IMG/VR virus record: IMGVR_UViG_3300032240_001991
Span: 1-64,000 of that record
Length of the DNA: 64,000 nt
Direction: 5' to 3' (one strand)
In this document: positions 16,501 to 41,486 of the stretch, piece by piece
How the letters are laid out: every line of letters starts with the position of its first letter
Position numbering within the stretch: the first letter of the stretch is position 1
Notes under the pieces: model-generated
The model's database searches: none
What the model was told of the DNA's origin: nothing
Seen by the model: the letters and a program-made list of their open reading frames with translations, nothing else
Position numbers and translations under genes: made by a program

Positions 16501-16889
16501 CACTACCAGGAAGTGGTATTGTTGTAATGGGTCAGTATACTCGTGCAAGCGTAGCTAGCGCATTAGATAGAGTAAATGTTGCAAGACTTGTTGCTTACAT
16601 TCGCAAGCAGCTAGAAATTCTATCTCGTCCGTTCTTGTTTGAACCAAACGACAAGATTACACGCGATGAAATTAAAGCAGCAGCTGACAGTTTCTTACTT
16701 GAATTAGTAGGACAGCGTGCGTTGTACGACTTCATTACAGTTTGTGACGAGTCAAACAACACACCTGCAAGAATTGATCGCAGTGAACTTTGGATGGATA
16801 TTGCTATTGAGCCAGTTAAGGCCGTAGAGTTCATCTACATTCCACTCAGACTAGTTAACACTGGTGCGATTGCGGCTGGTAACGTATAA
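13524..16889 (+). CDS. gp18: Contractile tail sheath protein
   Basis: SPGVLVSVVDES N-terminus; FPWFAPAGLRRG, INPI, LDRVNVARL, FLFEPND and IEPVKAVEFIYI C-terminal sheath motifs. Confidence 0.95.
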   Translation: MATLNSPGVLVSVVDESFYLPAAPGTIPLVFVASASNKQNASGTATAAGTLDANAGKVWTITSQRDLADTFGTPYFQTDASGNPVNAGELNEYGLQATYSLLGVSSRAFVVRADVDLGQLHGESSIPNGDPASGTYWVDTANSLYGISEWDATNAVFVNKIPLVIDNDNKDMVAALAVDEWVPNASFGSQGNYAITVTSENTNQVWYKNTDNAWVKVGSNNEDFSTSWHASTCWQTSWPVVSSTGFNAVNSSTSFKINTVSVTLGSNVTPAGVASSINSQMYTYGVGARVVNNKLAIYADAGATSNGSTADGKIAIAAVGTATQVLTSLGLAAGTYGNVDLAVQPHTQVPRFATNANPTGSVYIKTTAPNTGANWSVKYFNGSTKTWGTVSTPIYASSAAALYAYDKAGGLNVPVGTLYIESNYDHGTGDTVSSPLFGEFKVYRRNAVYPTTITYSVPSTFTGFAATTSTFQIKETVANSSAFSAGVTVTLAANATLTDFVTAVSAAGLTNVSAEYDSTADTISLSHALGGDIKLLDGTNTPLTGNGANALGFTAYNMSTGLGTANLYATGEYETDGFTLKASNWKPLVFEAKTTAPYTTPADGQLWYSSVVNEVDIMYHNGSTWVGYKTAFPTSDPKGPQVTATAPTTQSDGTPLVDGDIWISTADMENYGKVVYVWNGSTLKWILQDVTDQVTPNGWLFADARWAASGQASEPATIKALLSSNYLDPDAPDPALYPEGMRLWNLRRSGYNVKKYHSNYINIYANDGKNIRYNNDIMDNTMDPYFADRWVSASPNNADGSGTFGRHAQRGVVVAAFKSLVDTNTAIRDTDTLTFNLIACPGYPEAVQNMVAFNIDRKQTAFVLGDTPFRLAANGTDLAAWGNNTNGALDNNDEGGVTHDQYMAFYYPSGYTNDNLGNYIVVPPSHMMMRTIAKSDSVSFPWFAPAGLRRGIVDNATAVGYVEATTGEFKQASLYESLRDVMAQNGHINPIATLPGSGIVVMGQYTRASVASALDRVNVARLVAYIRKQLEILSRPFLFEPNDKITRDEIKAAADSFLLELVGQRALYDFITVCDESNNTPARIDRSELWMDIAIEPVKAVEFIYIPLRLVNTGAIAAGNV

Positions 16890-22006: not shown

Positions 22007-23596
22007 ATGGCTAGTAAAAATCTTGACGGCGCCCTTGTTAAAAAGGCTCATACTAAACAACGATGGACTGAAAAAAATATTCAAGATCTGATGTTATGTC
22101 AAGATCCTGAAAACGGTCCAGAGTATTTTCTTAATAATTTCTTCTTTATTCAACATCCTACCCAAGGTAAGATACAATATAAAGCATACGAATATCAAAA
22201 AGAATTACTAGACAGCTATAATCTTCATCGTTTTAGTGTAAACATGCTAGGACGACAGATGGGTAAGACAACTACTGCGGTAGGCTTCTTACTATGGTAC
22301 GCTATGTTTATGGACAATAGCACTATTTTAATTGCCGCACACAAATATACAGGTGCACAAGAAATTATGCAACGTTTGCGATATGCATACGAAATGTGTC
22401 CTGATTTTATTCGAGCAGGTGTTACAAGTTATAATAAACAAAGTATTGAATTTGAAAACGGCAGTCGAATTGTAGCGCAAACGACTACTGAAACAACAGG
22501 ACGCGGTATGTCTGTTTCGTTATTATACTGCGACGAGTTTGCCTACGTTGAACCTAATATTGCTGTTGAATTTTGGACTTCAATTAGTCCTACGCTAGCA
22601 ACAGGTGGTAAAGCAATTATTACTTCTACTCCTAATAGCGACGAAGATCAGTTTGCTCAAATTTGGAATGAAGCTAATAAGAGATTTGACGAATACGGCA
22701 ATGAACAAACTCTAGGTCGAAACGGATTTTATCCTTATAAAGCAGTATGGAGTCAGCATCCTGATAGAGACGAAGTATGGGCTAATACAGAACGCAGTCG
22801 TGTAGGAGACGAGAGATTCCGCCGTGAGCACGAATGTGAATTCTTAGTATTTGATGAAACCTTAATTAATAGTATTAGTTTGTTAGATTTAGAAGGGCGA
22901 GATCCAATAATGAAAATGGGACAAGCTCGTTGGTACAAGAAAATTAATCCTGCAAGCACTTATATTTTTAGTCTAGACCCTAGTTTAGGCACAGGGGGAG
23001 ACTATGCTGCTATTGAAGTAATAGAAGTTCCTAGCATGGAGCAGGTAGCAGAATGGCATCATAACACCACTCCAATACAGTCACAGGTAAGAATACTAAA
23101 GGACATGATTAAGCATGTTGATGATCAGTGCACAGCAATGGGTGTAACTAGTAGCATTTACTATTCTGTAGAAAATAACTCAGTTGGTGAAAGCGCACTA
23201 GTATCTATCAACGAATTAGGTGAAGAAAGTTTTCCTGGGTTGTTTCTTAGCGAACCTATTAAAAAAGGGCACGTTAGACGTTTTCGTAGAGGATTCAACA
23301 CTACGCATTCTGCTAAAATTTCAGCATGTGCTAAATTAAAACAATTAATTGAAACAAAGCAGATTACTATTAATAGTAAAACTTTAATAAGTGAACTTAA
23401 AAGTTTCGTAGCAGCAGGAATAACATTTAAAGCTAAGTCTGGGCAGCACGACGACTTGGTATCTAGCTTATTACTATCTATACGTATGATAATGCTTTTG
23501 CAAGACTGGGATCCTTCTATATACGAAAAGATGAGAGACCATACCGGATTAGAAGAACACGACCTACCAATGCCCATTTATATTAGTACATTCTAG
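22007..23596 (+). CDS. gp17: Terminase large subunit
   Basis: LGRQMGKTT Walker A, LLYCDEFA Walker B, TSTPN, SLDPSLGTGGDY and HDDLV nuclease motifs. Confidence 0.95.
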   Translation: MASKNLDGALVKKAHTKQRWTEKNIQDLMLCQDPENGPEYFLNNFFFIQHPTQGKIQYKAYEYQKELLDSYNLHRFSVNMLGRQMGKTTTAVGFLLWYAMFMDNSTILIAAHKYTGAQEIMQRLRYAYEMCPDFIRAGVTSYNKQSIEFENGSRIVAQTTTETTGRGMSVSLLYCDEFAYVEPNIAVEFWTSISPTLATGGKAIITSTPNSDEDQFAQIWNEANKRFDEYGNEQTLGRNGFYPYKAVWSQHPDRDEVWANTERSRVGDERFRREHECEFLVFDETLINSISLLDLEGRDPIMKMGQARWYKKINPASTYIFSLDPSLGTGGDYAAIEVIEVPSMEQVAEWHHNTTPIQSQVRILKDMIKHVDDQCTAMGVTSSIYYSVENNSVGESALVSINELGEESFPGLFLSEPIKKGHVRRFRRGFNTTHSAKISACAKLKQLIETKQITINSKTLISELKSFVAAGITFKAKSGQHDDLVSSLLLSIRMIMLLQDWDPSIYEKMRDHTGLEEHDLPMPIYISTF

Positions 23597-25318: not shown

Positions 25319-25353
25319 TTGCAAATATAAATAAAAGTGCGTATAGTAACTCA
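25319..25353 (+). promoter_or_regulatory. Overlapping sigma70-like (TTGCAA-17-TATAGT) and late (TATAAATA 25326-33) promoters of gp32
   Basis: Sequence cTTGCAAatataaataaaagtgcgTATAGT. Confidence 0.6.
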
Positions 25354-25426
25354 TACGCACTTTTTCTTTTTAGTCAGTTGGCTAAGAAGAAGTGGCAAAC
25401 TAAAGGCAACATTAAGGAGAAATATT

Positions 25427-26416
25427 ATGGCAACTTTAGCAGAAATTCGAGCAAAACTTCAGGCTTCTAGTCAGCAAGGCGCTGGCAACTCAACTGGCGG
25501 TGATAACGCAATTTATCCTCACTGGAATATTCCAGAAAACAGCACCGCCACTGTACGATTCCTTCCAGACGGCGATCCAAATAACACTTTCTTTTGGGTT
25601 GAACGTGCAATGATCAAATTGCCCTTCGCTGGTGTTAAGGGTGAGACATCTAGCAAGCCAGTAACTGTGCAGGTTCCTTGCATGGAAATGTGGGGTGAAA
25701 CTTGTCCAGTCCTTACAGAGGTACGTCCTTGGTTTAAGGATAAGAGCCTTGAAGATATGGGACGCAAGTATTGGAAGAAGAAGAGTTATTTGTTCCAAGG
25801 GTTTGTTGTTGAAAGCAAACTTCAGGAAGATGGTAAGGTTCCGGAAAATCCGGTTCGTCGATTTATTATTGGTAGTCAGATCTTCAACATTATCAAGAGT
25901 GCAATTATGGATCCAGAAATGGAAGAATTGCCAACTGATTATGTTCGCGGCGTTGATTTTAAGATCTCTAAGACGGCCAAAGGGCAGTATGCCGATTACA
26001 GCACTTCTAATTGGGCGCGGCGTGAACGTGCATTGAGTGATAGCGAACAGGCTGCTATTAAGCAGCATGGTTTGTTTACTCTCAAGGACTTCCTACCTAA
26101 GAAGCCAACTGAAGTTGAGCTTAAGGTCATTAAGGAGATGTTTGAAGCATCTGTTGATGGAGAAGCATTTGACATGGAACGCTGGGGTCAGTATTACAAG
26201 CCGTCCGGCTATGGTAATAGTGTAAACTTTGCTAGCGATGCACAACCTGTTAAGGCTACCGCAGCTAAGGCAGTGTCTGAAGACGAGGATCCTCCTTTTG
26301 AGGCGGATACCAAACCAACTGCAACCGCTGCTCCGTCACCAGCTCCAGTTGCTGATGGCGCAAGCTCACGTGCTCAGGATATCTTGGCAGCAATTCGCAA
26401 TCGTAAACAACAGTAA
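25427..26416 (+). CDS. gp32: Single-stranded DNA-binding protein
   Basis: ATVRFLPDGD, CMEMWGETCPV, RKYWKK, GVDFKISK and YADYSTS; acidic tail; start placed at MATLAEIR. Confidence 0.9.
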   Translation: MATLAEIRAKLQASSQQGAGNSTGGDNAIYPHWNIPENSTATVRFLPDGDPNNTFFWVERAMIKLPFAGVKGETSSKPVTVQVPCMEMWGETCPVLTEVRPWFKDKSLEDMGRKYWKKKSYLFQGFVVESKLQEDGKVPENPVRRFIIGSQIFNIIKSAIMDPEMEELPTDYVRGVDFKISKTAKGQYADYSTSNWARRERALSDSEQAAIKQHGLFTLKDFLPKKPTEVELKVIKEMFEASVDGEAFDMERWGQYYKPSGYGNSVNFASDAQPVKATAAKAVSEDEDPPFEADTKPTATAAPSPAPVADGASSRAQDILAAIRNRKQQ

Positions 26417-26430: not shown

Positions 26431-27489
26431 ATGGCAAAAACATTTGATATCTCTAAATTTCGAAAGAGTATTACGAAGTCTATTGACGGCCTTGGGATTG
26501 GATTTAACGATCCCACAGACTGGGTTTCAACTGGTAATTACGCTTTAAACTATCTAATCTCAGGGGACTTCTTTCGAGGAGTCCCTTTGGGTAAGGTAAC
26601 TGTATTTGCAGGTGAATCAGGTGCCGGCAAGAGTTATATCTGTGCTGGCAATATTGTAAGGCATGCTCAGGAACAAGGTATTTTTGTTATCTTAGTTGAT
26701 ACAGAAAATGCGTTGGATGAAGCATGGTTGCATGCACTTGGCGTAGATACATCAGAAGAAAAACTACTTAAACTTAATATGGCAATGATTGACGATGTAG
26801 CTAAAACTATCTCGGAATTCATGAAAGAATATAAGAGCATGCCTGCGGAAGATCGTCCTAAGGTTATGTTTGTTATTGACAGTTTAGGTATGTTGTTGAC
26901 ACCAACTGACGTAAATCAGTTTGAAGCAGGAGAAATGAAGGGAGACATGGGCCGTAAGCCTAAGGCCTTAACATCTCTTGTTCGTAATTGTGTAAATATG
27001 TTTGGTTCGTATAATGTAGGTATGGTATGCACCAATCATACTTATGCTAGCCAAGACATGTTTGACCCAGATGATAAGATTTCCGGTGGGCAAGGGTTTA
27101 TCTATGCATCTAGTATTGTAGTTGCTATGAAAAAACTTAAGCTCAAAGAAGATGAAGATGGAAACAAGGTCAGTGATGTATTAGGTATTCGCAGTGCCTG
27201 TAAGATTATGAAGACTAGGTATGCTAAGCCTTTTGAAACTGTGCAGGTTAAGATTCCATATTCAACCGGAATGAGTCCTACGTCCGGTCTAGTTGACATG
27301 TTTGAGAAAATGAATGTATTATCCAAGGTAGGCAACAAGTTAGCCTATACAGATAAAGAAACAGGTGAAATTATTGCTGAGTTCCGTAAAAACTGGACTG
27401 AAGATAAGTTAACGCTTATCATGAAACAGTGGGATGAAAGCAGTGTAAATCCTGTAGTAGATTCTGAAAATTCAACTGAGGAAGAATAA
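26431..27489 (+). CDS. uvsX: RecA-like recombinase
   Basis: AGESGAGKS Walker A, VIDSLG, TNHTY and SGGQG..YASS. Confidence 0.95.
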   Translation: MAKTFDISKFRKSITKSIDGLGIGFNDPTDWVSTGNYALNYLISGDFFRGVPLGKVTVFAGESGAGKSYICAGNIVRHAQEQGIFVILVDTENALDEAWLHALGVDTSEEKLLKLNMAMIDDVAKTISEFMKEYKSMPAEDRPKVMFVIDSLGMLLTPTDVNQFEAGEMKGDMGRKPKALTSLVRNCVNMFGSYNVGMVCTNHTYASQDMFDPDDKISGGQGFIYASSIVVAMKKLKLKEDEDGNKVSDVLGIRSACKIMKTRYAKPFETVQVKIPYSTGMSPTSGLVDMFEKMNVLSKVGNKLAYTDKETGEIIAEFRKNWTEDKLTLIMKQWDESSVNPVVDSENSTEEE

Positions 27490-27731
27490 TGGACGAGAGT
27501 TTAATTGTTGAAATTTGGGATACCTTTAAGCAATATATTCCTGAAAAGAACCGTAACAACGCTGCTGAACAGTATGTTGACTGGCTTCTAGGTAAGGAGT
27601 TTACGTCGGAAGACCTTGAAGGTTACTTAGGATATGATCCTCATCTAGACGATGCTATTTCTGCCATTCTTGAAGGCGGGGAGTATGAAGAGGACGAGGA
27701 ATACGATCAGGAAGATGGCGAGGACTATTAA
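27489..27731 (+). CDS. Small acidic hypothetical protein
   Basis: Translationally coupled between uvsX and uvsY. Confidence 0.6.
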   Translation: MDESLIVEIWDTFKQYIPEKNRNNAAEQYVDWLLGKEFTSEDLEGYLGYDPHLDDAISAILEGGEYEEDEEYDQEDGEDY

Positions 27732-28189
27732 TGTCTTTGTGGTATTCCAAGGTGAGCAAGGATATTGCTCACCTTCCTGATTGTATTGAACATTTCTACA
27801 AAGAGATAGAAATTGCCAGACGAGAAGTCAGAATACACGGCAACGTTGAAAAAGCAGCTTCTTCACTACCAGGTATTGTTGAGCAAAGATTTAATCAGCT
27901 TCAAGAAATTGAAGCTATTTTAGAATATCTTAACATTGAATTAAGACGAGTAAGAAGTAAAACCTTTAAAAAGTTTTTAGAGAATTATCAAAGAGCCCTT
28001 AGTTCTCGAGATGTTGAAAAATATGTAGACGGTGAGGCTGATGTAGTTGATATGGAAAAAATTATCAACGAATTTGCTCTTTTGAGAAATCAATGGTTGG
28101 GTATCATTAAGGCCATCGATCAGAAGCAATGGCAAATTACTAATATTGTTAAATTAAGAGCCGCTGGCCTAGAGGATGTAACAGTATAA
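27731..28189 (+). CDS. uvsY: Recombination mediator UvsY-like
   Basis: ALSSRDVEKYVDGEADVV...GIIKAID.K.WQITNIVKLR. Confidence 0.75.
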   Translation: MSLWYSKVSKDIAHLPDCIEHFYKEIEIARREVRIHGNVEKAASSLPGIVEQRFNQLQEIEAILEYLNIELRRVRSKTFKKFLENYQRALSSRDVEKYVDGEADVVDMEKIINEFALLRNQWLGIIKAIDQKQWQITNIVKLRAAGLEDVTV

Positions 28190-29379
28190 TGCACATTGAA
28201 GACTTAATTGAACGTCTAGCAGGATCAGGTAATTTTATATTTACTACTCCAATTCCGTTGTCGTCGTTTGATGATAAAATCATTCACAGCTTTTCTCATC
28301 AAATTATGACGGGTAATGCCTTTACTAAAAAGCAAAGAGAACTTGCTTTAAAATTAGTAAACAAATATAAAAAATCTTTAAAACAAGAACTATCAATAGA
28401 TATTGAAAGTATCTTAAAAGCACCTTCTTTCAGAATGCCTGAAAGGACTATTTCAAGTGCAAAACAAATTTCAATTAACCTTGATTCGCAGGGAATTAAA
28501 ACAATCTTTGTAAAATTTCCTTATGATAATGCGTTAGTTGAAATGATAAAAGATTTCAGAAAGCGGTCAATTAACATTGAACGAAGTTTAATTGCATGGA
28601 ATTCTGAACAGAGAGTTTGGGAATTTGGATTGAGCGAAGGGAATATCTTATTCCTCTCGTCTTTTTTAGATCACGGATTTGTTGCCGATGAACAATTTAT
28701 TGAATTCTTAAATGAAATTAAAATCATTGTAGGTAACATTGAAGGATACGTTCCGATGTTAGTTCGTACAGGAGATCAATTTACTTTTGTAAATCTGCCA
28801 TCAAATGTACATAACGAGACGTATTCTAATCTAACAGAAGCACTACTAAGTGCACGGCGACGAGGAGTATCGTGCTGGGATGACCAAGTTAATTCAGTAT
28901 TGAAATCCCAATATAAAGAATCAGTTATTAACTTCTTTGAAAATAAATCAGAAGAACAGCGTAATAATTCTCTTGCTGATTTTCAAGAAATAATCAAGTA
29001 TTCAAAAAACGTTTTGTTTGTTATACCTGGAGGGCATGAACTTAAGATACTTCGGCCAGTTCACCAACTTTTAAAAACTATTCAAAATGACTTTGATAAT
29101 ATTTCAGTTTTGTTTAGACTTGACAGTGGTTTAGGAACCGTGTTTAATGACTATGTTAAAGAGAATTCACTTAATCAGCCGTTGACTAATGATACAAAAT
29201 ATATCTTTGTTAGTGGTAAGTTACCTAAAACTATTGTAGAGTCAAACAAATACTTTGATCTTGTATTTCAGTTTGGGTTAAATTCTGCGCATTACGGTCT
29301 AAAGAAATTTGTAAAATTACATCAAAACGTAATTGTTATAGATTCTGTAGGAGAAACACAGGAGTTTAAATTTGGCTAA
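28189..29379 (+). CDS. Hypothetical protein
   Basis: 396-aa ORF coupled to neighbours. Confidence 0.65.
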   Translation: MHIEDLIERLAGSGNFIFTTPIPLSSFDDKIIHSFSHQIMTGNAFTKKQRELALKLVNKYKKSLKQELSIDIESILKAPSFRMPERTISSAKQISINLDSQGIKTIFVKFPYDNALVEMIKDFRKRSINIERSLIAWNSEQRVWEFGLSEGNILFLSSFLDHGFVADEQFIEFLNEIKIIVGNIEGYVPMLVRTGDQFTFVNLPSNVHNETYSNLTEALLSARRRGVSCWDDQVNSVLKSQYKESVINFFENKSEEQRNNSLADFQEIIKYSKNVLFVIPGGHELKILRPVHQLLKTIQNDFDNISVLFRLDSGLGTVFNDYVKENSLNQPLTNDTKYIFVSGKLPKTIVESNKYFDLVFQFGLNSAHYGLKKFVKLHQNVIVIDSVGETQEFKFG

Positions 29380-30844
29380 TTGTACTATAATCATACTTGA
29401 CGAAGTTAATGTTAAGATCACTAACTTAGATCTTGACACTCGTAAAGCATTGGTTAAAAAATTTAAACTAGAAGATCCTACCGCTCGATTTAGGCCTTCT
29501 TATAAATTAGGAAGATGGGATGGCTCTGTTAGTTTCTTTAATATTGGAGGAACTACATACTTCAATATGCTTGAAAAAATATTGGCAGAATTAGAAAATA
29601 GAAATTATGAAATCAATGTAGACGATCGTCGCAATAGTCCTCAATTAGAATTTGATAGAATTACTGAAGATTTTTGGGGTGAAAAATGTTGGCCAAAAGG
29701 TCATCGATTTGAAGGACACCCTATTAGATTGAGAGACGACCAAGTTGAAGTCGTTAACAACTTTCTTGCCAATCCACAAAGTTTGCAGGAAGTTGCTACC
29801 GGTGCTGGTAAAACTATTATGACTGCAACTTTATCAAAAATTTGCGAAAAATACGGAAGAACTATTACAATCGTACCTAATAAAAGCCTAGTTGAACAGA
29901 CAGAAGAAGACTTTATTAATGTAGGATTGGATGTAGGTGTTTACTACGGAAATAGAAAGGATCTTAATAAAACACATACTATTTGTACGTGGCAAAGCCT
30001 TAACATCTTAGATAAAAAATCATTTGATAATGATTCAGAAATTTTAACACTAGCAGAATTTCTAGAAGGCGTTGGCACAGTAATCGTTGACGAAGTACAT
30101 ATGGCTAAAGCTGATGTACTCAAGAAACTTTTAACAAATAATCTTGCAAATGCACCTATTCGTTGGGGACTAACTGGCACTATTCCAAAGGAAGAAATTA
30201 ATTTTGAAAACATTCGCGTATCGATTGGCGACGTAGTTGGTCGTGTTAGTGCACATGAATTACAACAAAAAGGAATACTTAGCCAGTGTCATGTGAATAT
30301 TATTCAGACAGGCGAATGGAAGGAATTTCGTAGCTATGCTGAAGAATTAAAGTATCTTGTAACAAATTCTGAAAGAATAGAGTTTGTTTCTAAGAAAATT
30401 TCGGCAATATCTAACACAGGTAATACACTTATTTTGGTTGATAGAATTGAGTGCGGTCAAATGCTAAAAGACAGTTTAACAAAACTTACAGGAAACGAAG
30501 TAGCATTTGTTTCTGGTGCAGTTAAAACTAAAGACCGTAAAGAAGAATACGACGAAGTATCAACTAGCTCTAATAAAATTATTGTAGCAACTTACGGCGT
30601 AGCTGCTGTTGGTATTAATATACCTCGTATTTTTAACCTTGTTCTCATTGAACCCGGAAAAAGCTTTGTTCGTGTTATACAAAGTATTGGGCGCGGAATA
30701 AGAAAAGCAGAAGATAAAGATTTTGTGCAAATTTGGGACATAACCGCAGCTTGTAAGTTTGCTAAACGACACTTAACTGAAAGAAAGAAATTTTATAAAG
30801 ACGCACAATATCCATTTACAATAGAAAAGGTACAATATCAATAA
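29372..30844 (+). CDS. uvsW: SF2 DNA helicase UvsW
   Basis: ATGAGKT, VDEVH, GLTGT, VGINIP and QSIGRGIR. Confidence 0.92.
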   Translation: MANCTIIILDEVNVKITNLDLDTRKALVKKFKLEDPTARFRPSYKLGRWDGSVSFFNIGGTTYFNMLEKILAELENRNYEINVDDRRNSPQLEFDRITEDFWGEKCWPKGHRFEGHPIRLRDDQVEVVNNFLANPQSLQEVATGAGKTIMTATLSKICEKYGRTITIVPNKSLVEQTEEDFINVGLDVGVYYGNRKDLNKTHTICTWQSLNILDKKSFDNDSEILTLAEFLEGVGTVIVDEVHMAKADVLKKLLTNNLANAPIRWGLTGTIPKEEINFENIRVSIGDVVGRVSAHELQQKGILSQCHVNIIQTGEWKEFRSYAEELKYLVTNSERIEFVSKKISAISNTGNTLILVDRIECGQMLKDSLTKLTGNEVAFVSGAVKTKDRKEEYDEVSTSSNKIIVATYGVAAVGINIPRIFNLVLIEPGKSFVRVIQSIGRGIRKAEDKDFVQIWDITAACKFAKRHLTERKKFYKDAQYPFTIEKVQYQ

Positions 30845-32041: not shown

Positions 32042-32234
32042 ACCGCAGGATGTCTGTGAATGTTACCAATGCATCTTAGATAATAATTTAACACAAAATG
32101 GATGGCCGCTATATTTGGTCAAATTTATCTTATGTACAGAATGTGGTAATAAACGTTGTCCAAAAGCAACAGATCATAGGCATAAGTGCACCGGAAGTAA
32201 CGAGACCGGCCAACCAGGAAGTCGATTTCAATGA
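32034..32234 (+). CDS. Small Cys-rich protein
   Basis: CECYQC...CTECGNKRCPKATDHRHKC. Confidence 0.55.
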   Translation: MNEPQDVCECYQCILDNNLTQNGWPLYLVKFILCTECGNKRCPKATDHRHKCTGSNETGQPGSRFQ

Positions 32235-32926
32235 TTGATTTAGTAGAACAACCGTTTAATTGCGTACATTGCGGAAAGAGTTTTATGAAAGAAAAAACTC
32301 TTGTGGCTCATATGTGCGAAAATAAAAGACGCGCTTTACAAAAGGATGAAAAGCGTGTTCAGGCTGGATTCATGGCCTACAATCGTTTCTATCAATTAAC
32401 ACAAAATGCTAAAAAAGCTAAGACTTATGACGATTTTTGTAAGAGTTCTTACTATAATGCATTTGTTAAGTTTGGTAGCTTTATTAATAACGTTAATCCA
32501 TTATACCCTGATAAGTTCATTGACTTTGTTATTAAAAGTGGTGTAAAATTGGACCATTGGTGTAGAGACGAACTTTACGAAAAGTATCTTTACGAAACAA
32601 TCAAAGTTGAACCGGTAGAATCTGCTGTGCAAAGAAGTCTGCAAACAATGATGGACTGGGGTGACATCAGTCAAGCACAGTTTAATCATTATTTTAGATA
32701 TGTAAATCATAATCGCGCTGTCCATGATATACTTAATGGAAAAATTAGTCCTTGGTTAATACTTAATACTAAGAGCGGCAAAGATATGGTATCAGGCTTC
32801 AACGACGAGCAGCTAAACTTAATTGCACCAGCATTTGATGTATCATATTGGCTTAAAAAATTTAAAGATCGAGTTGACGATGTTACGCTTGTCAAAGAAA
32901 TCTGTAAAGAAGCAGGCATCAAATGA
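32231..32926 (+). CDS. Hypothetical protein with N-terminal C2H2-like zinc finger
   Basis: CVHCGKSF...LVAHMC. Confidence 0.6.
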   Translation: MIDLVEQPFNCVHCGKSFMKEKTLVAHMCENKRRALQKDEKRVQAGFMAYNRFYQLTQNAKKAKTYDDFCKSSYYNAFVKFGSFINNVNPLYPDKFIDFVIKSGVKLDHWCRDELYEKYLYETIKVEPVESAVQRSLQTMMDWGDISQAQFNHYFRYVNHNRAVHDILNGKISPWLILNTKSGKDMVSGFNDEQLNLIAPAFDVSYWLKKFKDRVDDVTLVKEICKEAGIK

Positions 32927-33519
32927 CTAAAGTAAGTTGTGACGTTGACATTGATTTTGCAAATCGAGATGATATTTTAAATAAATTACAATATATATCA
33001 GCATATCGTGTTGAAAGAGGCGAAGGAAAACGGCATAATACTGGCGTATATATGCACAAAATTCCTTTTAATCCAATAACTAATACCGCAAGCATTGAAT
33101 ACGAAGAAGCAGAAGGCCGCGGTTATTTTAAGTTTGATTTTTTAAATGTTAGCATTTATAAAGACATAAAAAACGAAGAACATTTAATTGAGTTAATGAA
33201 TAAGGAGCCATTATGGGAACTTTTACTTCAAGAGGAATTTGTAAATCTGTTATTTCATTTAAAGGGCCACTCGGCGGTTCTGAAGAAAAATTGCCCCACT
33301 TCAGTGGAACAATTAGCTGCGGTCCTAGCGATGATACGCCCCGCGAAACGTTATCTGATTGGGAAAGATTGGACGACGATTATGAAGGAGATTTGGGAGA
33401 AACCTGAGCATAACGAGTATTACTTTAAACGTGCACACGCTATTAGCTATGCATTTCTTGTAGTAGTGCACATGAACTTATTATGCGAAAATTTTGAAAA
33501 AGTTACTTCAGTCTCTTAA
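32923..33519 (+). CDS. Minimal DnaE (DNA polymerase III alpha)-like palm-domain protein
   Basis: CDVDIDF, RHNTGVY, KFDFLNV, LAMIRPA and FKRAHAISYA match DnaE motifs in order within 198 aa. Confidence 0.75.
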   Translation: MTKVSCDVDIDFANRDDILNKLQYISAYRVERGEGKRHNTGVYMHKIPFNPITNTASIEYEEAEGRGYFKFDFLNVSIYKDIKNEEHLIELMNKEPLWELLLQEEFVNLLFHLKGHSAVLKKNCPTSVEQLAAVLAMIRPAKRYLIGKDWTTIMKEIWEKPEHNEYYFKRAHAISYAFLVVVHMNLLCENFEKVTSVS

Positions 33520-33883
33520 CTGTACGTACTAGCTGAATTGATTTTCTTTTAACTCTTTTTTCAGCTAGTTCACTTAAATTAACAACAGGCCCAAATATTA
33601 ATTTAACATCTTTAGAATTAAATGTTTTGATATAATCTCTAAATAATATCATATCTTTTTTAAGGAAAATATTAATAGGAATTTTTCTATTACTTTCCCA
33701 CCACCAAATATCACCTAACTCTAAGAATTTCTGACGTTCGTCGTCTGATTTAATACAGGAAAAGTCGTAGATACTCGTTACATAGGAATCAAAATTGAGA
33801 ATGATTCCCACGTATTCAACATCGCTTGATTTGATGCATGTTATGAATGGAAAATTCTTTTGAATGTTGTCTTTAGTAGTCAT
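33503..33883 (-). CDS. Hypothetical protein
   Basis: 126-aa ORF convergent with the mini-DnaE gene. Confidence 0.6.
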   Translation of the reverse strand: MTTKDNIQKNFPFITCIKSSDVEYVGIILNFDSYVTSIYDFSCIKSDDERQKFLELGDIWWWESNRKIPINIFLKKDMILFRDYIKTFNSKDVKLIFGPVVNLSELAEKRVKRKSIQLVRTVKRLK

Positions 33884-34760: not shown

Positions 34761-35756
34761 ATGAACCTTATACAGGGTACCGTACAGTCATTTTTACCTT
34801 CAAGAAGAAAAACAACCTCAGGCGGTTGGATTTCTTTTAATGCTCCCTGTTGTCAACATCGAGGCGAAAATCAGGATAAAAAAAGCCGAGGTGGAATTAT
34901 TTTTGAAAAAGACGGCTTTGTATATAATTGTTTTAATTGCGGTTATAAAGCAGGATGGGTACCTGGTAAAAATCTTTCAAAGAATGCTAAAGAGTTGATG
35001 CGTTGGCTAGGAATGCCAGACACTGAAATTAACAAACTTTCTTTAGAAGCGTTAAAAGAAAAAGATGCTATCCCAGTAGCTAAAAAAGAGCTTGTATTTG
35101 ATTTACAAGACGAAGATCTTCCAGATAATTGCATTAGTGTATCTGAATGGATTGCACATGGATGCGAAGATTCTTACATGCTAGATTGTATTGAGTATAT
35201 AATAAGCAGAGGATTAAGTTTAGACGACTATAATTGGCATTGGTCTCCAGAACTTGGTTATCGAGATAGAATCATTTTACCATTTTATTATCAAAATAGA
35301 ATAGTAGGTTGGACAGGAAGAAAAATTAATGACGGAAAACCTAAGTATTTGACAAAAACTCAGGCAGGCTACGTTTTTAATTTAGACGCACAAGTCTATG
35401 AGAGAAAGTTTGTTGTAGTTGTTGAAGGCCAGTTTGATGCTATTGCCATCGATGGCGTTGCTATTATGCATAATGAACCAAATGAAGTTCAATGTGCAAG
35501 AATTAATGGTCTAGAAAAGGAAGTGATTGTAGTTCCAGACAGAGATCGAGCAGGTGCAAAGTTGTTAAAATCGGCACTTGAACACGGATGGAGTGTAAGT
35601 TTACCTCCGTGGGGAGATCATATTAAAGACGTTGCGGATGCAGTTAAAGAATACGGTAAAATTTATGTATTAGCCGCAATTTTACACTATAGAGAGCACA
35701 ATAGGATAAAAATAGAACTAATGAAAAAGAAGCTGGAGAAATTAAATGTCAAATAA
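34761..35756 (+). CDS. gp61: DNA primase (zinc-binding + TOPRIM)
   Basis: CCQH...CFNCG zinc site; VVEGQFDA and PDRDRAG TOPRIM motifs. Confidence 0.85.
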   Translation: MNLIQGTVQSFLPSRRKTTSGGWISFNAPCCQHRGENQDKKSRGGIIFEKDGFVYNCFNCGYKAGWVPGKNLSKNAKELMRWLGMPDTEINKLSLEALKEKDAIPVAKKELVFDLQDEDLPDNCISVSEWIAHGCEDSYMLDCIEYIISRGLSLDDYNWHWSPELGYRDRIILPFYYQNRIVGWTGRKINDGKPKYLTKTQAGYVFNLDAQVYERKFVVVVEGQFDAIAIDGVAIMHNEPNEVQCARINGLEKEVIVVPDRDRAGAKLLKSALEHGWSVSLPPWGDHIKDVADAVKEYGKIYVLAAILHYREHNRIKIELMKKKLEKLNVK

Positions 35757-37191
35757 AACAGATTACAGTTATGAGATTCAAAAAATCTACTTGGAAATGT
35801 TTTTAAGCGACGCTGAGACATTTATTCGATGCCAAAATATCTTTAATCCTGAGAATTTTGACCAAAAATTACGTAATGCGGCAGAATTCCTGACAACGTA
35901 TGTTGACAAATATAAAGTTATGCCTGAAGCTAATATTGTAAATGCTCAATGTAGAACACAGCTAGAGCCGGTATCAGTAGCTAAAGAAAACTATGTCTGG
36001 TTAATGGACGATTTTGAAAGATTTAGCCGACATAAATCGCTAGAACGTGCAATTATTACTAGCAGCGACCTGCTTGAAGCGGGAGACTATGGCCCTGTTG
36101 AAAAATTAATTAAAGAGGCTATTGCGATTAGTTTACAGAAAGACATGGGCACAGACTACTGGGAAGATCCTCGAGCTCGATTGATGAAATTAAAGGAAAA
36201 TAACGGCCAAATTAGCACTGGATGGCCTAGTGTTGATAAAAAACTATACGGCGGGTTTAAGCGGGGAGAACTTGACATTTGGTGCGCAGGATCAGGTGGT
36301 GGTAAGAGTTTATTCTTGGCTAACCTTGGTGTAAATTTTGCGCTTGCTGGATTAAATGTTATCTATTTTACGTTTGAATTAAGTGAAGAACTTGTGGGTA
36401 TGCGTATTGATAGTATGGTCACGGGCATCTCAACTAGAGAAGTGTTTAAGAATCTAGATGACGTTGAAATGAAGGTTAAGATGATAGGGAAGAAGTCTGG
36501 TAGTATACAGATAAAATACCTTCCTTCTGGCAAAAATTGTAATGATTTGAGGTCATTTTTGAAGGAATATCAGGTCAAAACTGGCAAAAAAGCTGACATT
36601 TTATTAGTGGACTACTTAGACCTTATGTTGCCTCTTAGTATTAAGATTAGTCCTGCTGATCTTTATGTGAAAGACAAATACGTTAGTGAAGAATTGCGTA
36701 ATTTAGCCATGGAAACGCAGACCGTTGTAGTAACTGCAAGTCAGTTAAACCGTTCTGCTGTTGAAGAAATTGAGTTTGACCATAGTCATATTTCAGGCGG
36801 ATTGAGTAAGATTCAAACAGCAGATAATGTCATAGGAATCTTTACAAGTCGCGCGATGAAGGAACGAGGCCGCTATCAAATTCAGTTTATGAAAACACGT
36901 AGTAGTAGCGGTGTTGGACAAAAAGTTGACCTAGAATTTAATGTTGACACACTGAGAATTAACGACCTTGGAGAAGAGGAAGAATCTAGCTTTAATCAGC
37001 AACGAGCCAATTCTTCTACTAGTAATATCGTAAATCAGTTTAAAAAAACCAGCACTATTAAAGAACCTGAACCAGACGAAAATCGTAACGTAGATCCTGC
37101 AGTTGGCGTGCCGGTTGGTAAAGTTAAAGCTACGTCTGATAGCTCTCGTATACGAGCAATGTTGGCTAATCTTAATAGTGAAAAGGATTAA
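35746..37191 (+). CDS. gp41: DnaB-like replicative helicase
   Basis: AGSGGGKS, FTFELSE, LVDYLDL, TASQLNR and QFMKTR. Confidence 0.92.
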   Translation: MSNKTDYSYEIQKIYLEMFLSDAETFIRCQNIFNPENFDQKLRNAAEFLTTYVDKYKVMPEANIVNAQCRTQLEPVSVAKENYVWLMDDFERFSRHKSLERAIITSSDLLEAGDYGPVEKLIKEAIAISLQKDMGTDYWEDPRARLMKLKENNGQISTGWPSVDKKLYGGFKRGELDIWCAGSGGGKSLFLANLGVNFALAGLNVIYFTFELSEELVGMRIDSMVTGISTREVFKNLDDVEMKVKMIGKKSGSIQIKYLPSGKNCNDLRSFLKEYQVKTGKKADILLVDYLDLMLPLSIKISPADLYVKDKYVSEELRNLAMETQTVVVTASQLNRSAVEEIEFDHSHISGGLSKIQTADNVIGIFTSRAMKERGRYQIQFMKTRSSSGVGQKVDLEFNVDTLRINDLGEEEESSFNQQRANSSTSNIVNQFKKTSTIKEPEPDENRNVDPAVGVPVGKVKATSDSSRIRAMLANLNSEKD

Positions 37192-37200
37192 ATATATGAT

Positions 37201-37884
37201 ATGCCAAAGTATACTGCACCAATTGGAATTCACGATACCTTAAATCCTAAAATATGGGACGGAGAAAGCCTCCGTCCTGAAGTTAAGAAATCTCTATTAA
37301 GAATTGCAAAAGAATTTTACAAATTTCTTAAAGTTTCTTCTCCTGTTCAGGATGTATTGTTAACTGGAAGTCAGGCCAATTACAACTATTCAAGAAACTC
37401 TGATATTGATTTGCACTTAGTTTTTGATTTTGAAAATATTGCTTGCGACGAGCCTATAAGCGAGTTGTTTGACACTAAAAGAAAGCTATGGAAAGAAAAA
37501 CATGACATCGACATCTACGGAATCCCTGTAGAAGTCTACGGCGAAGATTCAAATAATCCGTCTGTAAGTTCTGCTTATAGTCTTATTAAAGATGCATGGG
37601 TAAGAAACCCAAGTGATCCTGTAATTTCTTATAATAAAGATCGGGTAGAATACCTAACAGCTTTATGGATTAAGCTTATGGAAATATCCATTGAAAGCAA
37701 AAATCTAAAGATTTGTAATATAGTGCAACAGCTATTAGCAGACTATAGAAAAATGGGTTTGAAGGTCTACGGAGAATTTGGAGTACCAAATTTAGTATAC
37801 AAAAGTTTAAGAAATATTGGTATTATTAAACACATGAGCGATACAATTATTATGCTCACAGATGACGATTTAAGCCTTGACTAA
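37201..37884 (+). CDS. DNA polymerase beta-superfamily nucleotidyltransferase
   Basis: LTGSQANYNY...SDIDLHLV (GS + DxD) and VEVYGED. Confidence 0.75.
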   Translation: MPKYTAPIGIHDTLNPKIWDGESLRPEVKKSLLRIAKEFYKFLKVSSPVQDVLLTGSQANYNYSRNSDIDLHLVFDFENIACDEPISELFDTKRKLWKEKHDIDIYGIPVEVYGEDSNNPSVSSAYSLIKDAWVRNPSDPVISYNKDRVEYLTALWIKLMEISIESKNLKICNIVQQLLADYRKMGLKVYGEFGVPNLVYKSLRNIGIIKHMSDTIIMLTDDDLSLD

Positions 37885-38921: not shown

Positions 38922-41486
38922 ATGACTCCAGCTGATCCAACAAATAATCAACAACAGGCTACTCAACAAGCCCAACAACAGGCTCCTCAACAAGCTCCAA
39001 AACTAGCATCACCTGACTTTCAGAGTCAAATAGATTTTATGGCAGGTGTTATCGATAACATGCTATCCGGAGCTAATAAAAGAATTTTAGTTGGAGGAAA
39101 AACTGGTCTAGGTAAAACATCTTTTGTAAAACAGTTTGCTAAAGTTTTTGGATTTCCAACCATTATAGTTGAAATTCCTCATATTGTTGAAGAACAAATG
39201 ATTAACATCCCCTTTGTTATCTTTGATAAAAATGGTCAAAGCTCACAAGGGTACGATCAGGTTAAAATGGAAAAGGAAGGTTCTAGTCCTAAGGTTGAAT
39301 TAGGTAGTTCTTATCTTGCTACAAAATTAGCAAACTTAACAAAACTATCTGATGTTGAATACCGTACAAAAGTTAATAGTTACGACTCAACACTAAAAGA
39401 ATTAATACGTCAATTTGAAGAACAGTATCCTGGAACTATAGCTAAAGTTCGTTCAAAATACGATAAAATTTTATTCTTAGACGAATACTTTAGACAAACA
39501 ACACCCGCCATTAGAAATATTCTTAGAAATATATTAAACGACAGAATTGGTAATGACATTATACCTGCAGGTACATATGTAATGTACGCTTCTAACTTAG
39601 AAGATGTTTCAGGTAGTATTGATCCGCAATCTTCTCACACAACATTCTTTCAGAAAAAGTTTAAGGCTCCAACCAAATCTCAATGGTTATCTTATACTGT
39701 AAGCTCAGCCGTTGGCCAAGGCGTACACATTAAACAAGAAGTAGTAGATGCGTTTGATAAATCTCTTAAAGATGAACACGTTAGCTATGATGATTTAAAT
39801 TTAGAAATAAGAACAAGTCCTAGAAGATGGAGTGACATTTTTATATACATAAACAATGCCTTCCCATTTAAGAGCCCAGATGAGCTAGGAATTTTAAAAA
39901 CAACAATTAAGAAACAATTTCAAAACGATCAAGGAAACACTTCTGATCTATACAATGTAGTAGAAGCATTGCTAGCTAGACTAGCTATTCAATCAAATAT
40001 AGATCCTAAAAAAGTAAAAGAAGTATCCCCCGAGCAGTGGAGAGATGTGTTAGCCCAACAAGTTATGACCGTCATGCAAAGTAAAGGCATGAAGAAATAT
40101 GTTCCAGTCATACAAGGATTGCCCGGTGTAGGTAAGACTGCGATCGGCGGAACTTTTGAGAATCCGCCGTACAACATGAGATTTATTCCAATACTAGCAA
40201 CAACATTGTCTCGTGATAGCGTTGTGGGTATTCCTTTGCCTAAAGAGCAAAATAAACAAATGGGTGTAGAGTTTGCTAAACCAGAATTAGCTATTAAAAT
40301 AGATGACGATATTGAAAGAGCAAATAAGTCCTATTTTAACAGGCTACAGAAAAGAGAAAAAGAAGGCAAGCTAAACGGTAAAACTGCACAAGAAGCTTAT
40401 AGAGATTTTGAAAATCAAGAATACAAATATCTAATTTTTATTGACGAAATTAATCGTGTTAAAGATGTTGCTATCTTTAACAGTTTAAGAAGATTAATAT
40501 TAGAAAAAGAATTCAATGATCAATACAAGCTGCCTAAAGGGGCAGTAGTTGTTGCAGCAATGAATCCGTCGGACCTTGGTACAATTCCAATGACGTCTCA
40601 CTTTAGAGATGCTATTGATCTTATTGACGTTGAACCTAGTTGGAAAGATACAATCAAGTTTATTAAGAACCAAGTTGTTCCTTACCTAAAGAACGAGTAC
40701 AATCCTAGTGACATTGCACTTGATACGTCTTTACAAATTGTTGAAACGTTTCCACAAAACTTCTCTTTAGGAAGAAGACGAACCGCTAAAGAATTTTACA
40801 TTGCAATTGGAGGTTCAGAAGAACTTTACCTAAGTCCTAGAGACTATGACAATATGTTTAAAGTAATTGTCTCTGCAATTGATCGAGTTGCAAACTCACT
40901 TAAAGAGCAAATTAAACGTGGTAAAACTTTCTCACAAGACGAAGTTAACAATCGTATTATTCGTGCAGCAGCTGAAGTAATTGAAAGTACATTTGACGAT
41001 TTATTTTATAAGGCAGGAATGGGAACGCCACCGGGTTGGGATGACCGAGTTCTTAATTTCTTAAATAAGATCGTTGATGTTTCATTACAAATGAAATCAA
41101 CTAAAGCAGGACTAGGATCTTTATTAGACGATGTTATTGCAGGAACAACACAACTAAAAGACGACATAGATTTTGACAACTACATGGCAGATTATATGCC
41201 GGCAAAGTTCCAAAAGGACTTTGACGAATATCTGCACAATATGATCAAAACTACAGAGAACATTCAAGATGTTGTTGACAGTTTAAAAATAATTATAACT
41301 CAATTTGGAACAGCAATTAGAGAAAATCAATTAAATCCTGATGTGTTAAATCGTATAGAAAATACGATACATGTAAACTTTAATGAAGTTCTAAAATCAA
41401 CCGAAGGTAGTGAACAAGAAGACGCTGCTAGATATCTAGCTAAGAATTATAGCGATCTATTAGATATGCTAGGCGTAGATGCGTAA
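38922..41486 (+). CDS. Tandem-domain MoxR/dynein-related AAA+ ATPase
   Basis: Two modules: GGKTGLGKT/LFLDEY/ASN/SPRRW and GLPGVGKT/IFIDEINR/AAMNP/SPRDY. Confidence 0.85.
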   Translation: MTPADPTNNQQQATQQAQQQAPQQAPKLASPDFQSQIDFMAGVIDNMLSGANKRILVGGKTGLGKTSFVKQFAKVFGFPTIIVEIPHIVEEQMINIPFVIFDKNGQSSQGYDQVKMEKEGSSPKVELGSSYLATKLANLTKLSDVEYRTKVNSYDSTLKELIRQFEEQYPGTIAKVRSKYDKILFLDEYFRQTTPAIRNILRNILNDRIGNDIIPAGTYVMYASNLEDVSGSIDPQSSHTTFFQKKFKAPTKSQWLSYTVSSAVGQGVHIKQEVVDAFDKSLKDEHVSYDDLNLEIRTSPRRWSDIFIYINNAFPFKSPDELGILKTTIKKQFQNDQGNTSDLYNVVEALLARLAIQSNIDPKKVKEVSPEQWRDVLAQQVMTVMQSKGMKKYVPVIQGLPGVGKTAIGGTFENPPYNMRFIPILATTLSRDSVVGIPLPKEQNKQMGVEFAKPELAIKIDDDIERANKSYFNRLQKREKEGKLNGKTAQEAYRDFENQEYKYLIFIDEINRVKDVAIFNSLRRLILEKEFNDQYKLPKGAVVVAAMNPSDLGTIPMTSHFRDAIDLIDVEPSWKDTIKFIKNQVVPYLKNEYNPSDIALDTSLQIVETFPQNFSLGRRRTAKEFYIAIGGSEELYLSPRDYDNMFKVIVSAIDRVANSLKEQIKRGKTFSQDEVNNRIIRAAAEVIESTFDDLFYKAGMGTPPGWDDRVLNFLNKIVDVSLQMKSTKAGLGSLLDDVIAGTTQLKDDIDFDNYMADYMPAKFQKDFDEYLHNMIKTTENIQDVVDSLKIIITQFGTAIRENQLNPDVLNRIENTIHVNFNEVLKSTEGSEQEDAARYLAKNYSDLLDMLGVDA

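What the first reader, a model, noticed from the sequence alone, without database searches (positions are those of the whole stretch)
32923..33519. A 198-aa mini-DnaE retaining the catalytic palm motifs
Seen in order: DVDIDF (two catalytic Asp), RHNTGVY, KFDFL (third Asp), LAMIRP and FKRAHAISYA, all C-family polymerase hallmarks. The PHP domain, most of the fingers, and the clamp-binding and OB regions of the ~1100-aa bacterial DnaE are absent. It lies near primase and helicase. Inference: a minimal polymerase or primer-extension/repair enzyme, or one half of a split enzyme whose partner might be the overlapping zinc-finger ORF 32231..32926. No B-family polymerase is in this window.
Basis: partly seen in the sequence, partly recalled or inferred. 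Interest (0 to 1): 0.65.

Follow-up and report, generated by a model that had tools for sequence, protein, structure and literature searches.

The report
Half of a split mini polymerase
This 198-residue gene is a real, strongly conserved piece of a bacterial-type (Pol III alpha) DNA polymerase active site in a giant phage. It is one half of a two-gene "minimal split polymerase" that was described computationally in 2021, and its other half lies about 190 kb away in the same genome.

Summary
It is not a decaying fragment. It matches the 197-position profile PHROG 11778 ("DNA polymerase") end to end at E 1e-65. It has 7,438 homologous cluster representatives, and the best 120 listed are 187-205 aa. 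D7/D9/D11, K70, D72, R139-P140, K169 and H172 are invariant even in orthologs of about 39% identity. dN/dS is about 0.18.

An AlphaFold model (pLDDT 89.7) matches only C-family polymerases. The best match is Z 9.6 to Thermus Pol III alpha; the best unrelated chain scores Z 3.8.

The window is the first 64 kb of a 326,658-bp T4-like jumbo phage contig. The missing half of the palm, with the G-R-G-S nucleotide-binding loop, is a separate 187-aa gene at genome 222445-223008. It matches Pfam DNA_pol3_alpha above cut-off and ends where this ORF begins (E. coli alpha residues ~395-400). A complex prediction passes its controls (0.89 against 0.11).

The genome shows no PHP, finger-domain or HhH matches, but it has a family B polymerase.

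Iyer et al. 2021 (PMC7824862) already described this split minimal Pol III alpha of group 2.2 jumbo phages. The proposed partner, the zinc-finger ORF, is not supported as the missing half. The activity has not been tested.

The parts
32923..33519 (+). C-terminal (metal-binding / template-side) subunit of the split minimal Pol III alpha, 198 aa (P0001)
   Evidence: PHROG 11778 E 1e-65 over the full length. AF2 model pLDDT 89.7. VIA-align Z 9.6/9.5/9.4/8.1 to Taq, Mtb, PolC and E. coli Pol III alpha, with 188-196 residues aligned.
32941..32958 (+). D-V-D-I-D-F strand (D7, D9, D11). Aligns to E. coli DnaE P400-D401-F-D403-V-D405-F406.
   Evidence: Invariant in 63 close and 8 distant orthologs. 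Alignment to Mtb DnaE1 413-425 and E. coli 400-420.
33031..33051 (+). R-H-N-T-G-V-Y palm strand (H38 and G41 invariant). By eye it corresponds to E. coli K510-H-A-G-G-V-V516.
   Evidence: Invariance. E. coli sequence printed. The correspondence is by motif inspection, not by a scored alignment.
33130..33144 (+). K-F-D-F-L strand: K70 and D72, equivalent to E. coli K553 and D555 (third catalytic Asp)
   Evidence: Invariant. Lies inside the best-scoring collinear block against Mtb DnaE1 566-663. E. coli sequence.
33334..33348 (+). I-R-P-A-K finger motif (R139, P140 and K142 invariant), equivalent to E. coli F638-R-P-G641
33424..33450 (+). F-K-R-A-H-A-I-S-Y finger motif, equivalent to E. coli F756-N-K-S-H760-S-A-A-Y764
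   Evidence: K169, H172 and Y176 invariant. Aligned.
32231..32926 (+). Context, not shown to be part of the enzyme: a C2H2 zinc-finger plus all-alpha protein (PHROG 11058). Its stop overlaps the C-half start (ATGA).
   Evidence: Upstream on the same strand in 78/80 related loci and 8/8 distant phages, but at gaps from an overlap to 2.8 kb. No structural match.
33503..33883 (-). Context: a conserved convergent 126-aa ORF (PHROG 11637) that overlaps the 3' end of the C-half gene by 17 nt
   Evidence: Present on the opposite strand just downstream in 78/80 loci and 8/8 distant phages.

Best explanation
The ORF encodes the C-terminal subunit of the two-gene "split minimal DNA polymerase III alpha" of T4-like (group 2.2) jumbo phages.

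This subunit carries:
- the three metal-binding carboxylates (D7 and D9 on one strand, D72 on another), plus K70;
- a much reduced set of finger helices, with the R-P and F-K-x-x-H motifs.

The other subunit is a 187-aa protein encoded about 190 kb away (genome 222445-223008). It carries the G-R-G-S triphosphate-binding loop and the strand that precedes it.

The break falls inside the Pol-beta-type palm, between E. coli alpha residues ~395 and 400. Neither product can therefore form an active site alone. The two are predicted to assemble into one palm, with the N-half strand (I136-G139) lying against the C-half D-x-D strand.

The resulting ~385-aa heterodimer has no PHP/proofreading domain, thumb, clamp-binding region or OB region. 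The phage's main replicase is its own family B polymerase. The split enzyme most likely acts as a short-patch, low-processivity DNA polymerase, for example in gap filling, primer extension or recombination-dependent synthesis. That fits its place in the UvsX-UvsY-UvsW-primase-DnaB module.

Shown: homology, fold, completeness of the motif set across the two genes, co-occurrence and purifying selection. Predicted only: heterodimer formation. Inferred only: polymerase activity and its role.
For: Family and fold:
- PHROG 11778 full-length match at E 1e-65.
- The top 14 structural matches are all DnaE/PolC (Z 6.1-9.6, 188-197 aligned, rmsd 3.4-3.9). The next, unrelated, match scores Z 3.8.
- Foldseek's top 11 hits are all Pol III alpha.
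- Collinear profile matches to Mtb DnaE1 and E. coli DnaE.

Partner:
- G-L-G-R-G-S ORF found at genome 222445-223008.
- Pfam PF07733 positions 19-100/260, 40 bits against a cut-off of 23.9.
- PHROG 11127 at E 3e-44.
- Aligns to E. coli alpha 322-394, while the C-half starts at 400-401.

Co-occurrence:
- Nearly identical per-genus record counts in the phage database: Escherichia 34/34, Pseudomonas 11/11, Klebsiella 11/10.
- The N-half is present in 4 of 5 long uncultivated contigs that carry the C-half, including both complete ones.
- The two are always separate genes, 14 kb (RAS14) to 224 kb (Phosso) apart.

Selection:
- D7, D9, D11, K70, D72, R139, P140, K169 and H172 are invariant in 63 close and 8 distant orthologs.
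- Median dN/dS is 0.18 over 220 unsaturated pairs.
- 7,438 homologs of the C-half and 3,488 of the N-half; the best 120 listed for each are 187-205 aa and 167-190 aa.

Complex prediction:
- ipSAE 0.89 against a best control of 0.11. This mark was reached by 58 of 80 solved complexes and 2 of 110 mismatched pairs.
- The runs agree in at least 91% of contacts, and the partner's pLDDT is at least 89.
- Contacts include N-half 138-139 with C-half 10-12.

No other DnaE parts in the genome: no PHP, DNA_pol3_finger or HHH_6 match. A family B polymerase is present.

Prior description: Iyer et al. 2021, PMC7824862.
Against: - No biochemical or genetic data exist for any member. Literature searches found only the 2021 computational paper.
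- The complex score may partly reflect the model's memory of intact Pol III alpha structures, and my own alignments were used, so the calibration holds only roughly.
- The enzyme lacks a thumb. About 105 residues separate the D-x-D strand from the H-A-G-G strand in E. coli, against 26 here. It also lacks about 100 finger residues, including the stretch that holds E. coli R709/R710. Whether K142/R143 replace those residues was not tested. Templated synthesis is therefore not assured.
- Pfam DNA_pol3_alpha does not match the C-half at all.
- One 79%-complete contig with a C-half showed no N-half.
Confidence: 0.8

Rival explanations
1. One reading: the C-half pairs with the overlapping zinc-finger ORF 32231-32926, which supplies the missing part of the enzyme or a DNA-binding subunit.
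For: The stop and start overlap by 4 nt in this genome. The zinc-finger gene lies upstream on the same strand in 78/80 related loci and 8/8 distant phages. Its distribution among phage records (93) nearly equals that of the C-half (96). A thumb-less polymerase could need a DNA-binding helper.
Against: - The missing catalytic half is fully accounted for by the N-half gene.
- The gap between the zinc-finger gene and the C-half varies from an overlap to 2.8 kb, with other genes inserted.
- In phage RAS14 the zinc-finger gene is about 10 kb from the C-half.
- The confident model (pLDDT 92.9) is a C2H2 finger plus a helical domain with no DnaE-like or other clear match: Foldseek best E 1.7, VIA best Z 4.8.
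- The shared distribution is what any core gene of this clade would show.
Confidence: 0.1
2. The heterodimer is a Pol-beta-fold nucleotidyltransferase that no longer copies DNA. It could add nucleotides without a template, or make a nucleotide-derived product.
For: - It lacks the thumb, most of the fingers, the clamp-binding part and proofreading.
- The phage already has a family B replicase, and it encodes an RFC-like reading frame near the N-half (sequence read, not scanned against a family library).
- The Pol-beta superfamily has many non-replicative members. An unsplit one (NTP_transf_2) sits at 37201-37884.
Against: - The motifs kept outside the palm (R-P and F-K-x-x-H-x-x-x-Y) are specific to C-family fingers and are invariant.
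- The gene sits in a replication/recombination module.
- The only structural relatives are replicative polymerases.
Confidence: 0.12
3. A decaying remnant of a captured bacterial dnaE gene, or an intein-type split DnaE that is spliced into a full-length protein as in cyanobacteria.
For: It is short compared with the 1,160-aa DnaE. Two distant genes encode consecutive parts of the same domain.
Against: - Length and motifs are conserved across thousands of homologs and down to about 39% identity.
- dN/dS is about 0.18.
- There is no further DnaE-like sequence in the genome.
- Neither half has a Pfam intein/Hint match, and there is no room for one: the N-half ends about 8 residues after the last aligned DnaE position, and the C-half begins 6 residues before the D-x-D strand.
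Confidence: 0.01

Closest known systems
Split minimal DNA polymerase III alpha of group 2.2 jumbo phages (Iyer, Anantharaman, Krishnan, Burroughs & Aravind 2021, Viruses 13:63). Examples: RaK2 ORF124 (YP_007007279.1, "DNA polymerase"), 121Q gp16, Phosso gp437 ("DnaE-like DNA polymerase III alpha"). PHROG 11778 (C-half) and PHROG 11127 (N-half).
   Same: - Same family, at 38-53% identity to cultured-phage orthologs.
- Same length, same motifs and the same two-gene split.
- Same syntenic module: UvsW, small ORFs, zinc-finger ORF, C-half, convergent ORF, virion protein, primase, DnaB.
- A family B polymerase is also present.
   Different: Only in detail. This is an uncultivated phage. Its nearest relative is 80% identical, and the two halves are about 190 kb apart rather than 14-44 kb as in RAS14, 121Q, RaK2 and PA5oct.
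Bacterial C-family replicative polymerases (DnaE1/DnaE2/DnaE3/PolC; structures 2hnh, 2hpi/3e0d, 5lew, 3f2b)
   Same: - The Pol-beta-type palm, with the G-R-G-S loop, D401/D403/D555 and K553 equivalents.
- The R-P-G and F-N-K-S-H finger motifs.
- The fold superposes over nearly the whole 198 residues.
   Different: - Two polypeptides of 187 and 198 aa instead of one of about 1,100.
- No PHP, thumb, DNA_pol3_finger or HhH match, and no clamp-binding or OB parts.
- It is not the genome's main replicase.
Intein-split DnaE of cyanobacteria (DnaE-N / DnaE-C joined by trans-splicing; from established knowledge)
   Same: Two genes far apart on the genome encode consecutive parts of Pol III alpha.
   Different: There is no intein or Hint domain at the junction. 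The break lies inside the palm, not in the fingers. The product is predicted to be a non-covalent heterodimer. The combined length is about 385 aa, not about 1,200.

Membership tests
Jumbo-phage split minimal Pol III alpha, C-terminal subunit (PHROG 11778; Iyer et al. 2021) | Full-length match to the family profile, as a stand-alone protein of about 190-215 aa | tested here: met
   E 1.3e-65, residues 3-189 on profile positions 4-193 of 197. The best 120 listed homologs are 187-205 aa.
Jumbo-phage split minimal Pol III alpha, C-terminal subunit (PHROG 11778; Iyer et al. 2021) | Metal-binding carboxylates and finger motifs conserved | tested here: met
   D7, D9, D11, K70, D72, R139, P140, K169 and H172 are invariant in 63 close and 8 distant orthologs.
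Jumbo-phage split minimal Pol III alpha, C-terminal subunit (PHROG 11778; Iyer et al. 2021) | A separate, distantly located gene in the same genome encodes the N-terminal NTP-binding half | tested here: met
   Genome 222445-223008, 187 aa, G-R-G-S loop. PF07733 at 40 bits (cut-off 23.9). PHROG 11127 at E 3e-44.
Jumbo-phage split minimal Pol III alpha, C-terminal subunit (PHROG 11778; Iyer et al. 2021) | The host genome is a T4-like jumbo myovirus with a family B polymerase and no other Pol III domains | tested here: met
   - 326,658-bp virus contig.
- PolB at 237898-239130.
- gp32-type SSB, UvsX, UvsY, UvsW, DnaB, tail sheath and terminase.
- No PHP, finger-domain or HHH_6 match.
Jumbo-phage split minimal Pol III alpha, C-terminal subunit (PHROG 11778; Iyer et al. 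2021) | The two halves assemble into one catalytic domain | tested here: met
   Prediction only. ipSAE 0.89 against a best control of 0.11 (mark reached by 58/80 solved and 2/110 mismatched pairs). Contact agreement at least 91%, partner pLDDT at least 89. Physical binding was not measured.
Jumbo-phage split minimal Pol III alpha, C-terminal subunit (PHROG 11778; Iyer et al. 2021) | DNA polymerase activity | not testable with these tools
   No experimental report was found.
Canonical C-family DNA polymerase (DnaE/PolC) | Pol-beta-type palm with three catalytic carboxylates | tested here: met
   The palm is complete only when the N-half is added.
Canonical C-family DNA polymerase (DnaE/PolC) | N-terminal PHP domain | tested here: not met
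   No PF02811 match anywhere in the genome, while all 14 control genomes give a match.
Canonical C-family DNA polymerase (DnaE/PolC) | Thumb domain between the D-x-D strand and the H-A-G-G strand | tested here: not met
   26 residues (F12 to H38) against about 105 in E. coli (F406 to H511).
Canonical C-family DNA polymerase (DnaE/PolC) | Full finger domain, (HhH)2/beta-binding region and OB fold on one polypeptide | tested here: not met
   No PF17657 or PF14579 match. The protein ends about 25 residues after the F-K-x-x-H motif. Pfam PF07733 does not match the C-half.
Intein-split DnaE (cyanobacterial type) | Split-intein (Hint) halves at the junction | tested here: not met
   No intein/Hint Pfam match in either half. 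The termini leave no room for one.

The most novel reading that the evidence does not exclude
The most novel reading not excluded has two alternative forms.

1. The 187-aa and 198-aa pair is a working, self-sufficient template-directed DNA polymerase. It would be by far the smallest C-family enzyme, an obligate heterodimer whose core beta-sheet is built from two gene products. It might be completed by clade-specific neighbours (the zinc-finger protein, or the convergent 126-aa ORF) acting in place of the thumb. That would give an experimentally tractable model of an ancestral Pol III.

2. The pair has shifted to a new nucleotidyltransferase chemistry.

Either outcome would be new biochemistry, although the gene family itself is already described.
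Probability: 0.3. Interest if true: 0.7.

Novelty: already known. Interest (0 to 1): 0.35.

Why it matters
C-family polymerases replicate bacterial chromosomes and are large multi-domain enzymes. A naturally occurring version of about 385 aa, in two pieces and with only the catalytic core, shows how little of the enzyme is needed. It is conserved under purifying selection in thousands of environmental jumbo phages. It bears on how the Pol-beta-type replicases arose.

Because the family was described only by sequence analysis in 2021, the open question is biochemical: does the pair polymerise DNA, and for what? For this scan, the value lies in correct annotation of both halves and in correcting the proposed partner.

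Tried and rejected
- Pfam on the C-half gave no family at E <= 0.1.
- phmmer of the C-half against PDB sequences gave nothing. Only the 28-sequence profile reached DnaE1.
- Foldseek E-values for the C-half model were marginal (best 2.8e-3). The VIA-align second look gave the clear separation.
- Zinc-finger ORF: there is no significant structural match. The nominal top Foldseek hit, the lambda P helicase loader (E 1.7), and the T4 gp59 C-domain (Z 3.6, rank 23) are too weak to use. So I do not call it a helicase loader.
- The promoter scan of 29-38 kb was not above shuffled expectation (39 found, 34.5 expected). It gave no evidence on transcription units.
- The supplements of Iyer et al. are not held. 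I could not match accession numbers and rely on the text description plus the RefSeq and GenBank product names.
- The PA5oct omics paper does not mention these genes. The 2026 survey of bacterial polymerases does not cover them.
- Not run: the large representative-protein search (costly, and the claim does not rest on absence of relatives). A fused, unsplit mini-Pol III was therefore not looked for beyond the 80 loci, where the N-half was never within 3 kb of the C-half.

Full report
**What is there**

ORF 32923-33519 (+) encodes 198 residues. Its ATG overlaps the TGA of the upstream ORF 32231-32926 (ATGA). Its last 17 nt overlap a convergent ORF, 33503-33883.

The window is the first 64 kb of a single 326,658-bp virus contig. 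The contig is a T4-like jumbo myovirus. In the window:
- tail sheath 13524-16889 and large terminase 22007-23596;
- gp32-type SSB 25337-26416, UvsX 26431-27489 and UvsY 27731-28189;
- UvsW-type helicase 29372-30844 and primase 34761-35756;
- DnaB-type helicase 35746-37191.

**Is it a DnaE relative?**

Pfam finds nothing in the protein, and single-sequence search of PDB sequences finds nothing. Other evidence is clear:
- PHROG 11778, a 197-position family labelled "DNA polymerase", matches end to end at E 1.3e-65.
- A 28-sequence profile reaches M. tuberculosis DnaE1 at E 0.0015 in collinear pieces: 1-13 to 413-425, 53-137 to 566-663 and 160-175 to 773-788.
- A profile search against E. coli DnaE, taken from NC_000913.3, gives the same order: 400-420, 597-641 and 752-767.
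- In E. coli numbering, D7/D9/D11 align with D401/D403/D405. K70/D72 align with K553/D555. R139-P140 align with R639-P640. F168..H172..Y176 align with F756..H760..Y764.
- That D401, D403 and D555 are the catalytic residues of E. coli alpha is established knowledge, not tested here.

An AlphaFold2 model built on 63 sequences has mean pLDDT 89.7.
- Foldseek's top 11 PDB hits are all Pol III alpha, though with marginal E-values (best 2.8e-3).
- VIA-align gives Z 9.6 (rmsd 3.4, 194 aligned) to Thermus alpha 457-841, Z 9.5 to Mtb DnaE1 415-839, Z 9.4 to Geobacillus PolC and Z 8.1 to E. coli alpha 397-784.
- The best unrelated chain scores Z 3.8.

So 198 residues cover what takes about 390 residues in bacterial enzymes. 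About 80 residues between the D-x-D strand and the H-A-G-G strand (the thumb) are missing, and so are about 100 finger residues.

**Not a decaying fragment**

- The word-based search returns 7,438 cluster representatives at E <= 0.001. The best 120 are 187-205 aa, and several are named "DNA polymerase III alpha subunit" by JGI.
- In 63 sequences of 54-78% identity, 42 columns are invariant, including D7, D9, D11, K70, D72, R139, P140, K169 and H172.
- The same residues are invariant in the 38-53% identical orthologs of phages Phosso, PA5oct, Atu_ph07, XaC1, Vibrio 2.275.O, RaK2, GAP32 and 121Q.
- Nei-Gojobori dN/dS over 220 unsaturated pairs has median 0.18. The window against its nearest locus gives 0.15.

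**The other half**

A motif scan of the whole contig found a 187-aa ORF at 222445-223008 (+) with G-L-G-R-G-S-S-V-A-S.
- It matches Pfam DNA_pol3_alpha positions 19-100 of 260 at 40 bits, against a cut-off of 23.9.
- It matches PHROG 11127 ("DNA polymerase", 171 positions) at E 3e-44.
- It aligns with E. coli alpha 322-394, with G141-R142-G143-S144 on G361-R362-G363-S364.

The N-half therefore stops, and the C-half starts, within E. coli residues ~395-400. That point lies between the helix that follows the nucleotide-binding loop and the catalytic D-x-D strand. The genome has no PHP, DNA_pol3_finger or HHH_6 match. It does have a family B polymerase in an 898-aa frame at about 237.9-239.1 kb.

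**Do the halves belong together?**

Phyletic evidence:
- The C-half hits 96 phage records. The N-half hits the same jumbo-phage genera with nearly the same counts: Escherichia 34/34, Pseudomonas 11/11, Klebsiella 11/10, Salmonella 8/8, Erwinia 8/8.
- The N-half also hits about 58 records that carry ordinary full-length DnaE.
- Of five long uncultivated contigs with a C-half, four have an N-half, including both that are rated complete.
- The genes are never adjacent: 0 of 80 loci have the N-half within 3 kb.
- Their distance ranges from 14 kb in Stenotrophomonas phage RAS14, through 31-44 kb in 121Q, RaK2 and PA5oct, to 120-224 kb here, in related contigs and in Phosso.

Structural prediction:
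- The complex test gives ipSAE 0.89 against a best control of 0.11.
- This mark was reached by 58 of 80 solved complexes and 2 of 110 mismatched pairs. The counts hold only roughly, because my own alignments were used.
- The runs agree in at least 91% of contacts, and the partner's pLDDT is at least 89.
- The least-error contacts include N-half W138/G139 with C-half I10-F12. The strand before the G-R-G-S loop thus lies against the D-x-D strand, as in an intact palm.
- The N-half's clade-specific N-terminal region (residues 70-79) also packs on C-half 44-47 and 66-68.
- The tool warns that such a pass can come from memory of solved Pol III alpha structures. It supports binding but does not show it.

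**The zinc-finger ORF**

- It is a core gene of the clade. It lies upstream on the same strand in 78/80 loci and in all eight distant phages, and it is found in 93 phage records.
- The gap to the C-half varies from an overlap to 2.8 kb, with genes inserted. In RAS14 it is about 10 kb from the C-half.
- Its model is confident (pLDDT 92.9): a C2H2 finger followed by helices.
- It has no significant structural match and none to any polymerase.
- It cannot be the missing half of the active site. A role as an accessory factor is neither supported nor excluded.

**Prior knowledge**

Iyer et al. [quoted passage not shown] - They suggest a role with PolB in synthesis of one strand or in repair.
- RefSeq and GenBank already label orthologs "DNA polymerase" or "DnaE-like DNA polymerase III alpha".
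- I found no experimental study.

**Verdict**

- The split-enzyme guess is correct, but the proposed partner is wrong.
- The phenomenon is already published.

What this analysis adds:
- the location of both halves in this genome;
- the residue-level position of the break;
- a passing heterodimer prediction;
- evidence of strong purifying selection and very wide environmental distribution;
- the variable spacing between the halves.

Polymerase activity and its biological role remain inferred.

Noticed in passing
window 32231-32926 (+): Clade-specific protein (PHROG 11058) with an N-terminal C2H2 zinc finger (C11, C14, H27 and C29 invariant) and a helical body. The model is confident (pLDDT 92.9) but has no significant PDB match. 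It is a conserved member of the UvsW-primase-DnaB module, so it may be an uncharacterised replication factor.
   Followed up: partly
window 33503-33883 (-): A 126-aa ORF (PHROG 11637) convergent with the C-half gene, overlapping its last 17 nt. The same arrangement is found in 78/80 related loci and all 8 distant cultured phages. A conserved antisense-overlapping gene pair inside an otherwise one-directional replication module.
   Followed up: partly
window 37201-37884 (+): An intact, unsplit minimal Pol-beta-fold nucleotidyltransferase (Pfam NTP_transf_2, 24.9 bits against a cut-off of 21; G-S ... D-I-D motif; PHROG 36119, unknown function) directly after the DnaB gene. This is a second member of the same superfamily in the module.
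   Followed up: partly
window ~50000-64000, continuing to genome ~78000: A higher-GC island (47-50% against about 36% elsewhere) in which ORFs of >=100 aa cover only 28-69% of each 5-kb bin (genome mean 88%). It holds many short ORFs and one tRNA-Lys(UUU) at 60487-62. No Rfam family other than the tRNA was found. Its origin and content are not explained.
   Followed up: partly
genome 222445-223008 (L002:6446-7006), N-half: The N-half also matches PHROG 13169 (463 positions, match at 336-410) and PHROG 7513 (461 positions, match at 372-452), close to the C-terminal ends of those profiles. Other phage DnaE-like genes may therefore be broken at about the same point, but with a PHP domain attached.
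   Followed up: no
L096 / L097 (Stenotrophomonas phage RAS14, OP752703.1): Here the N-half gene (189807-190358) sits inside the UvsW-to-zinc-finger module, and the C-half (204470-205048) is only about 14 kb away. The halves have moved relative to each other during evolution while staying separate.
   Followed up: partly
window 38922-41486 (+): An 854-aa protein with two AAA-type ATPase regions (AAA_5 and AAA hits; PHROG 1297 "ATPase") and a Q-rich N-terminus. Function unknown.
   Followed up: no
whole contig G000: The record's listed completeness estimate is 36% although the contig is 326,658 bp and carries structural, replication and packaging genes. The estimate looks unreliable for this clade, or the true genome is much larger.
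   Followed up: no
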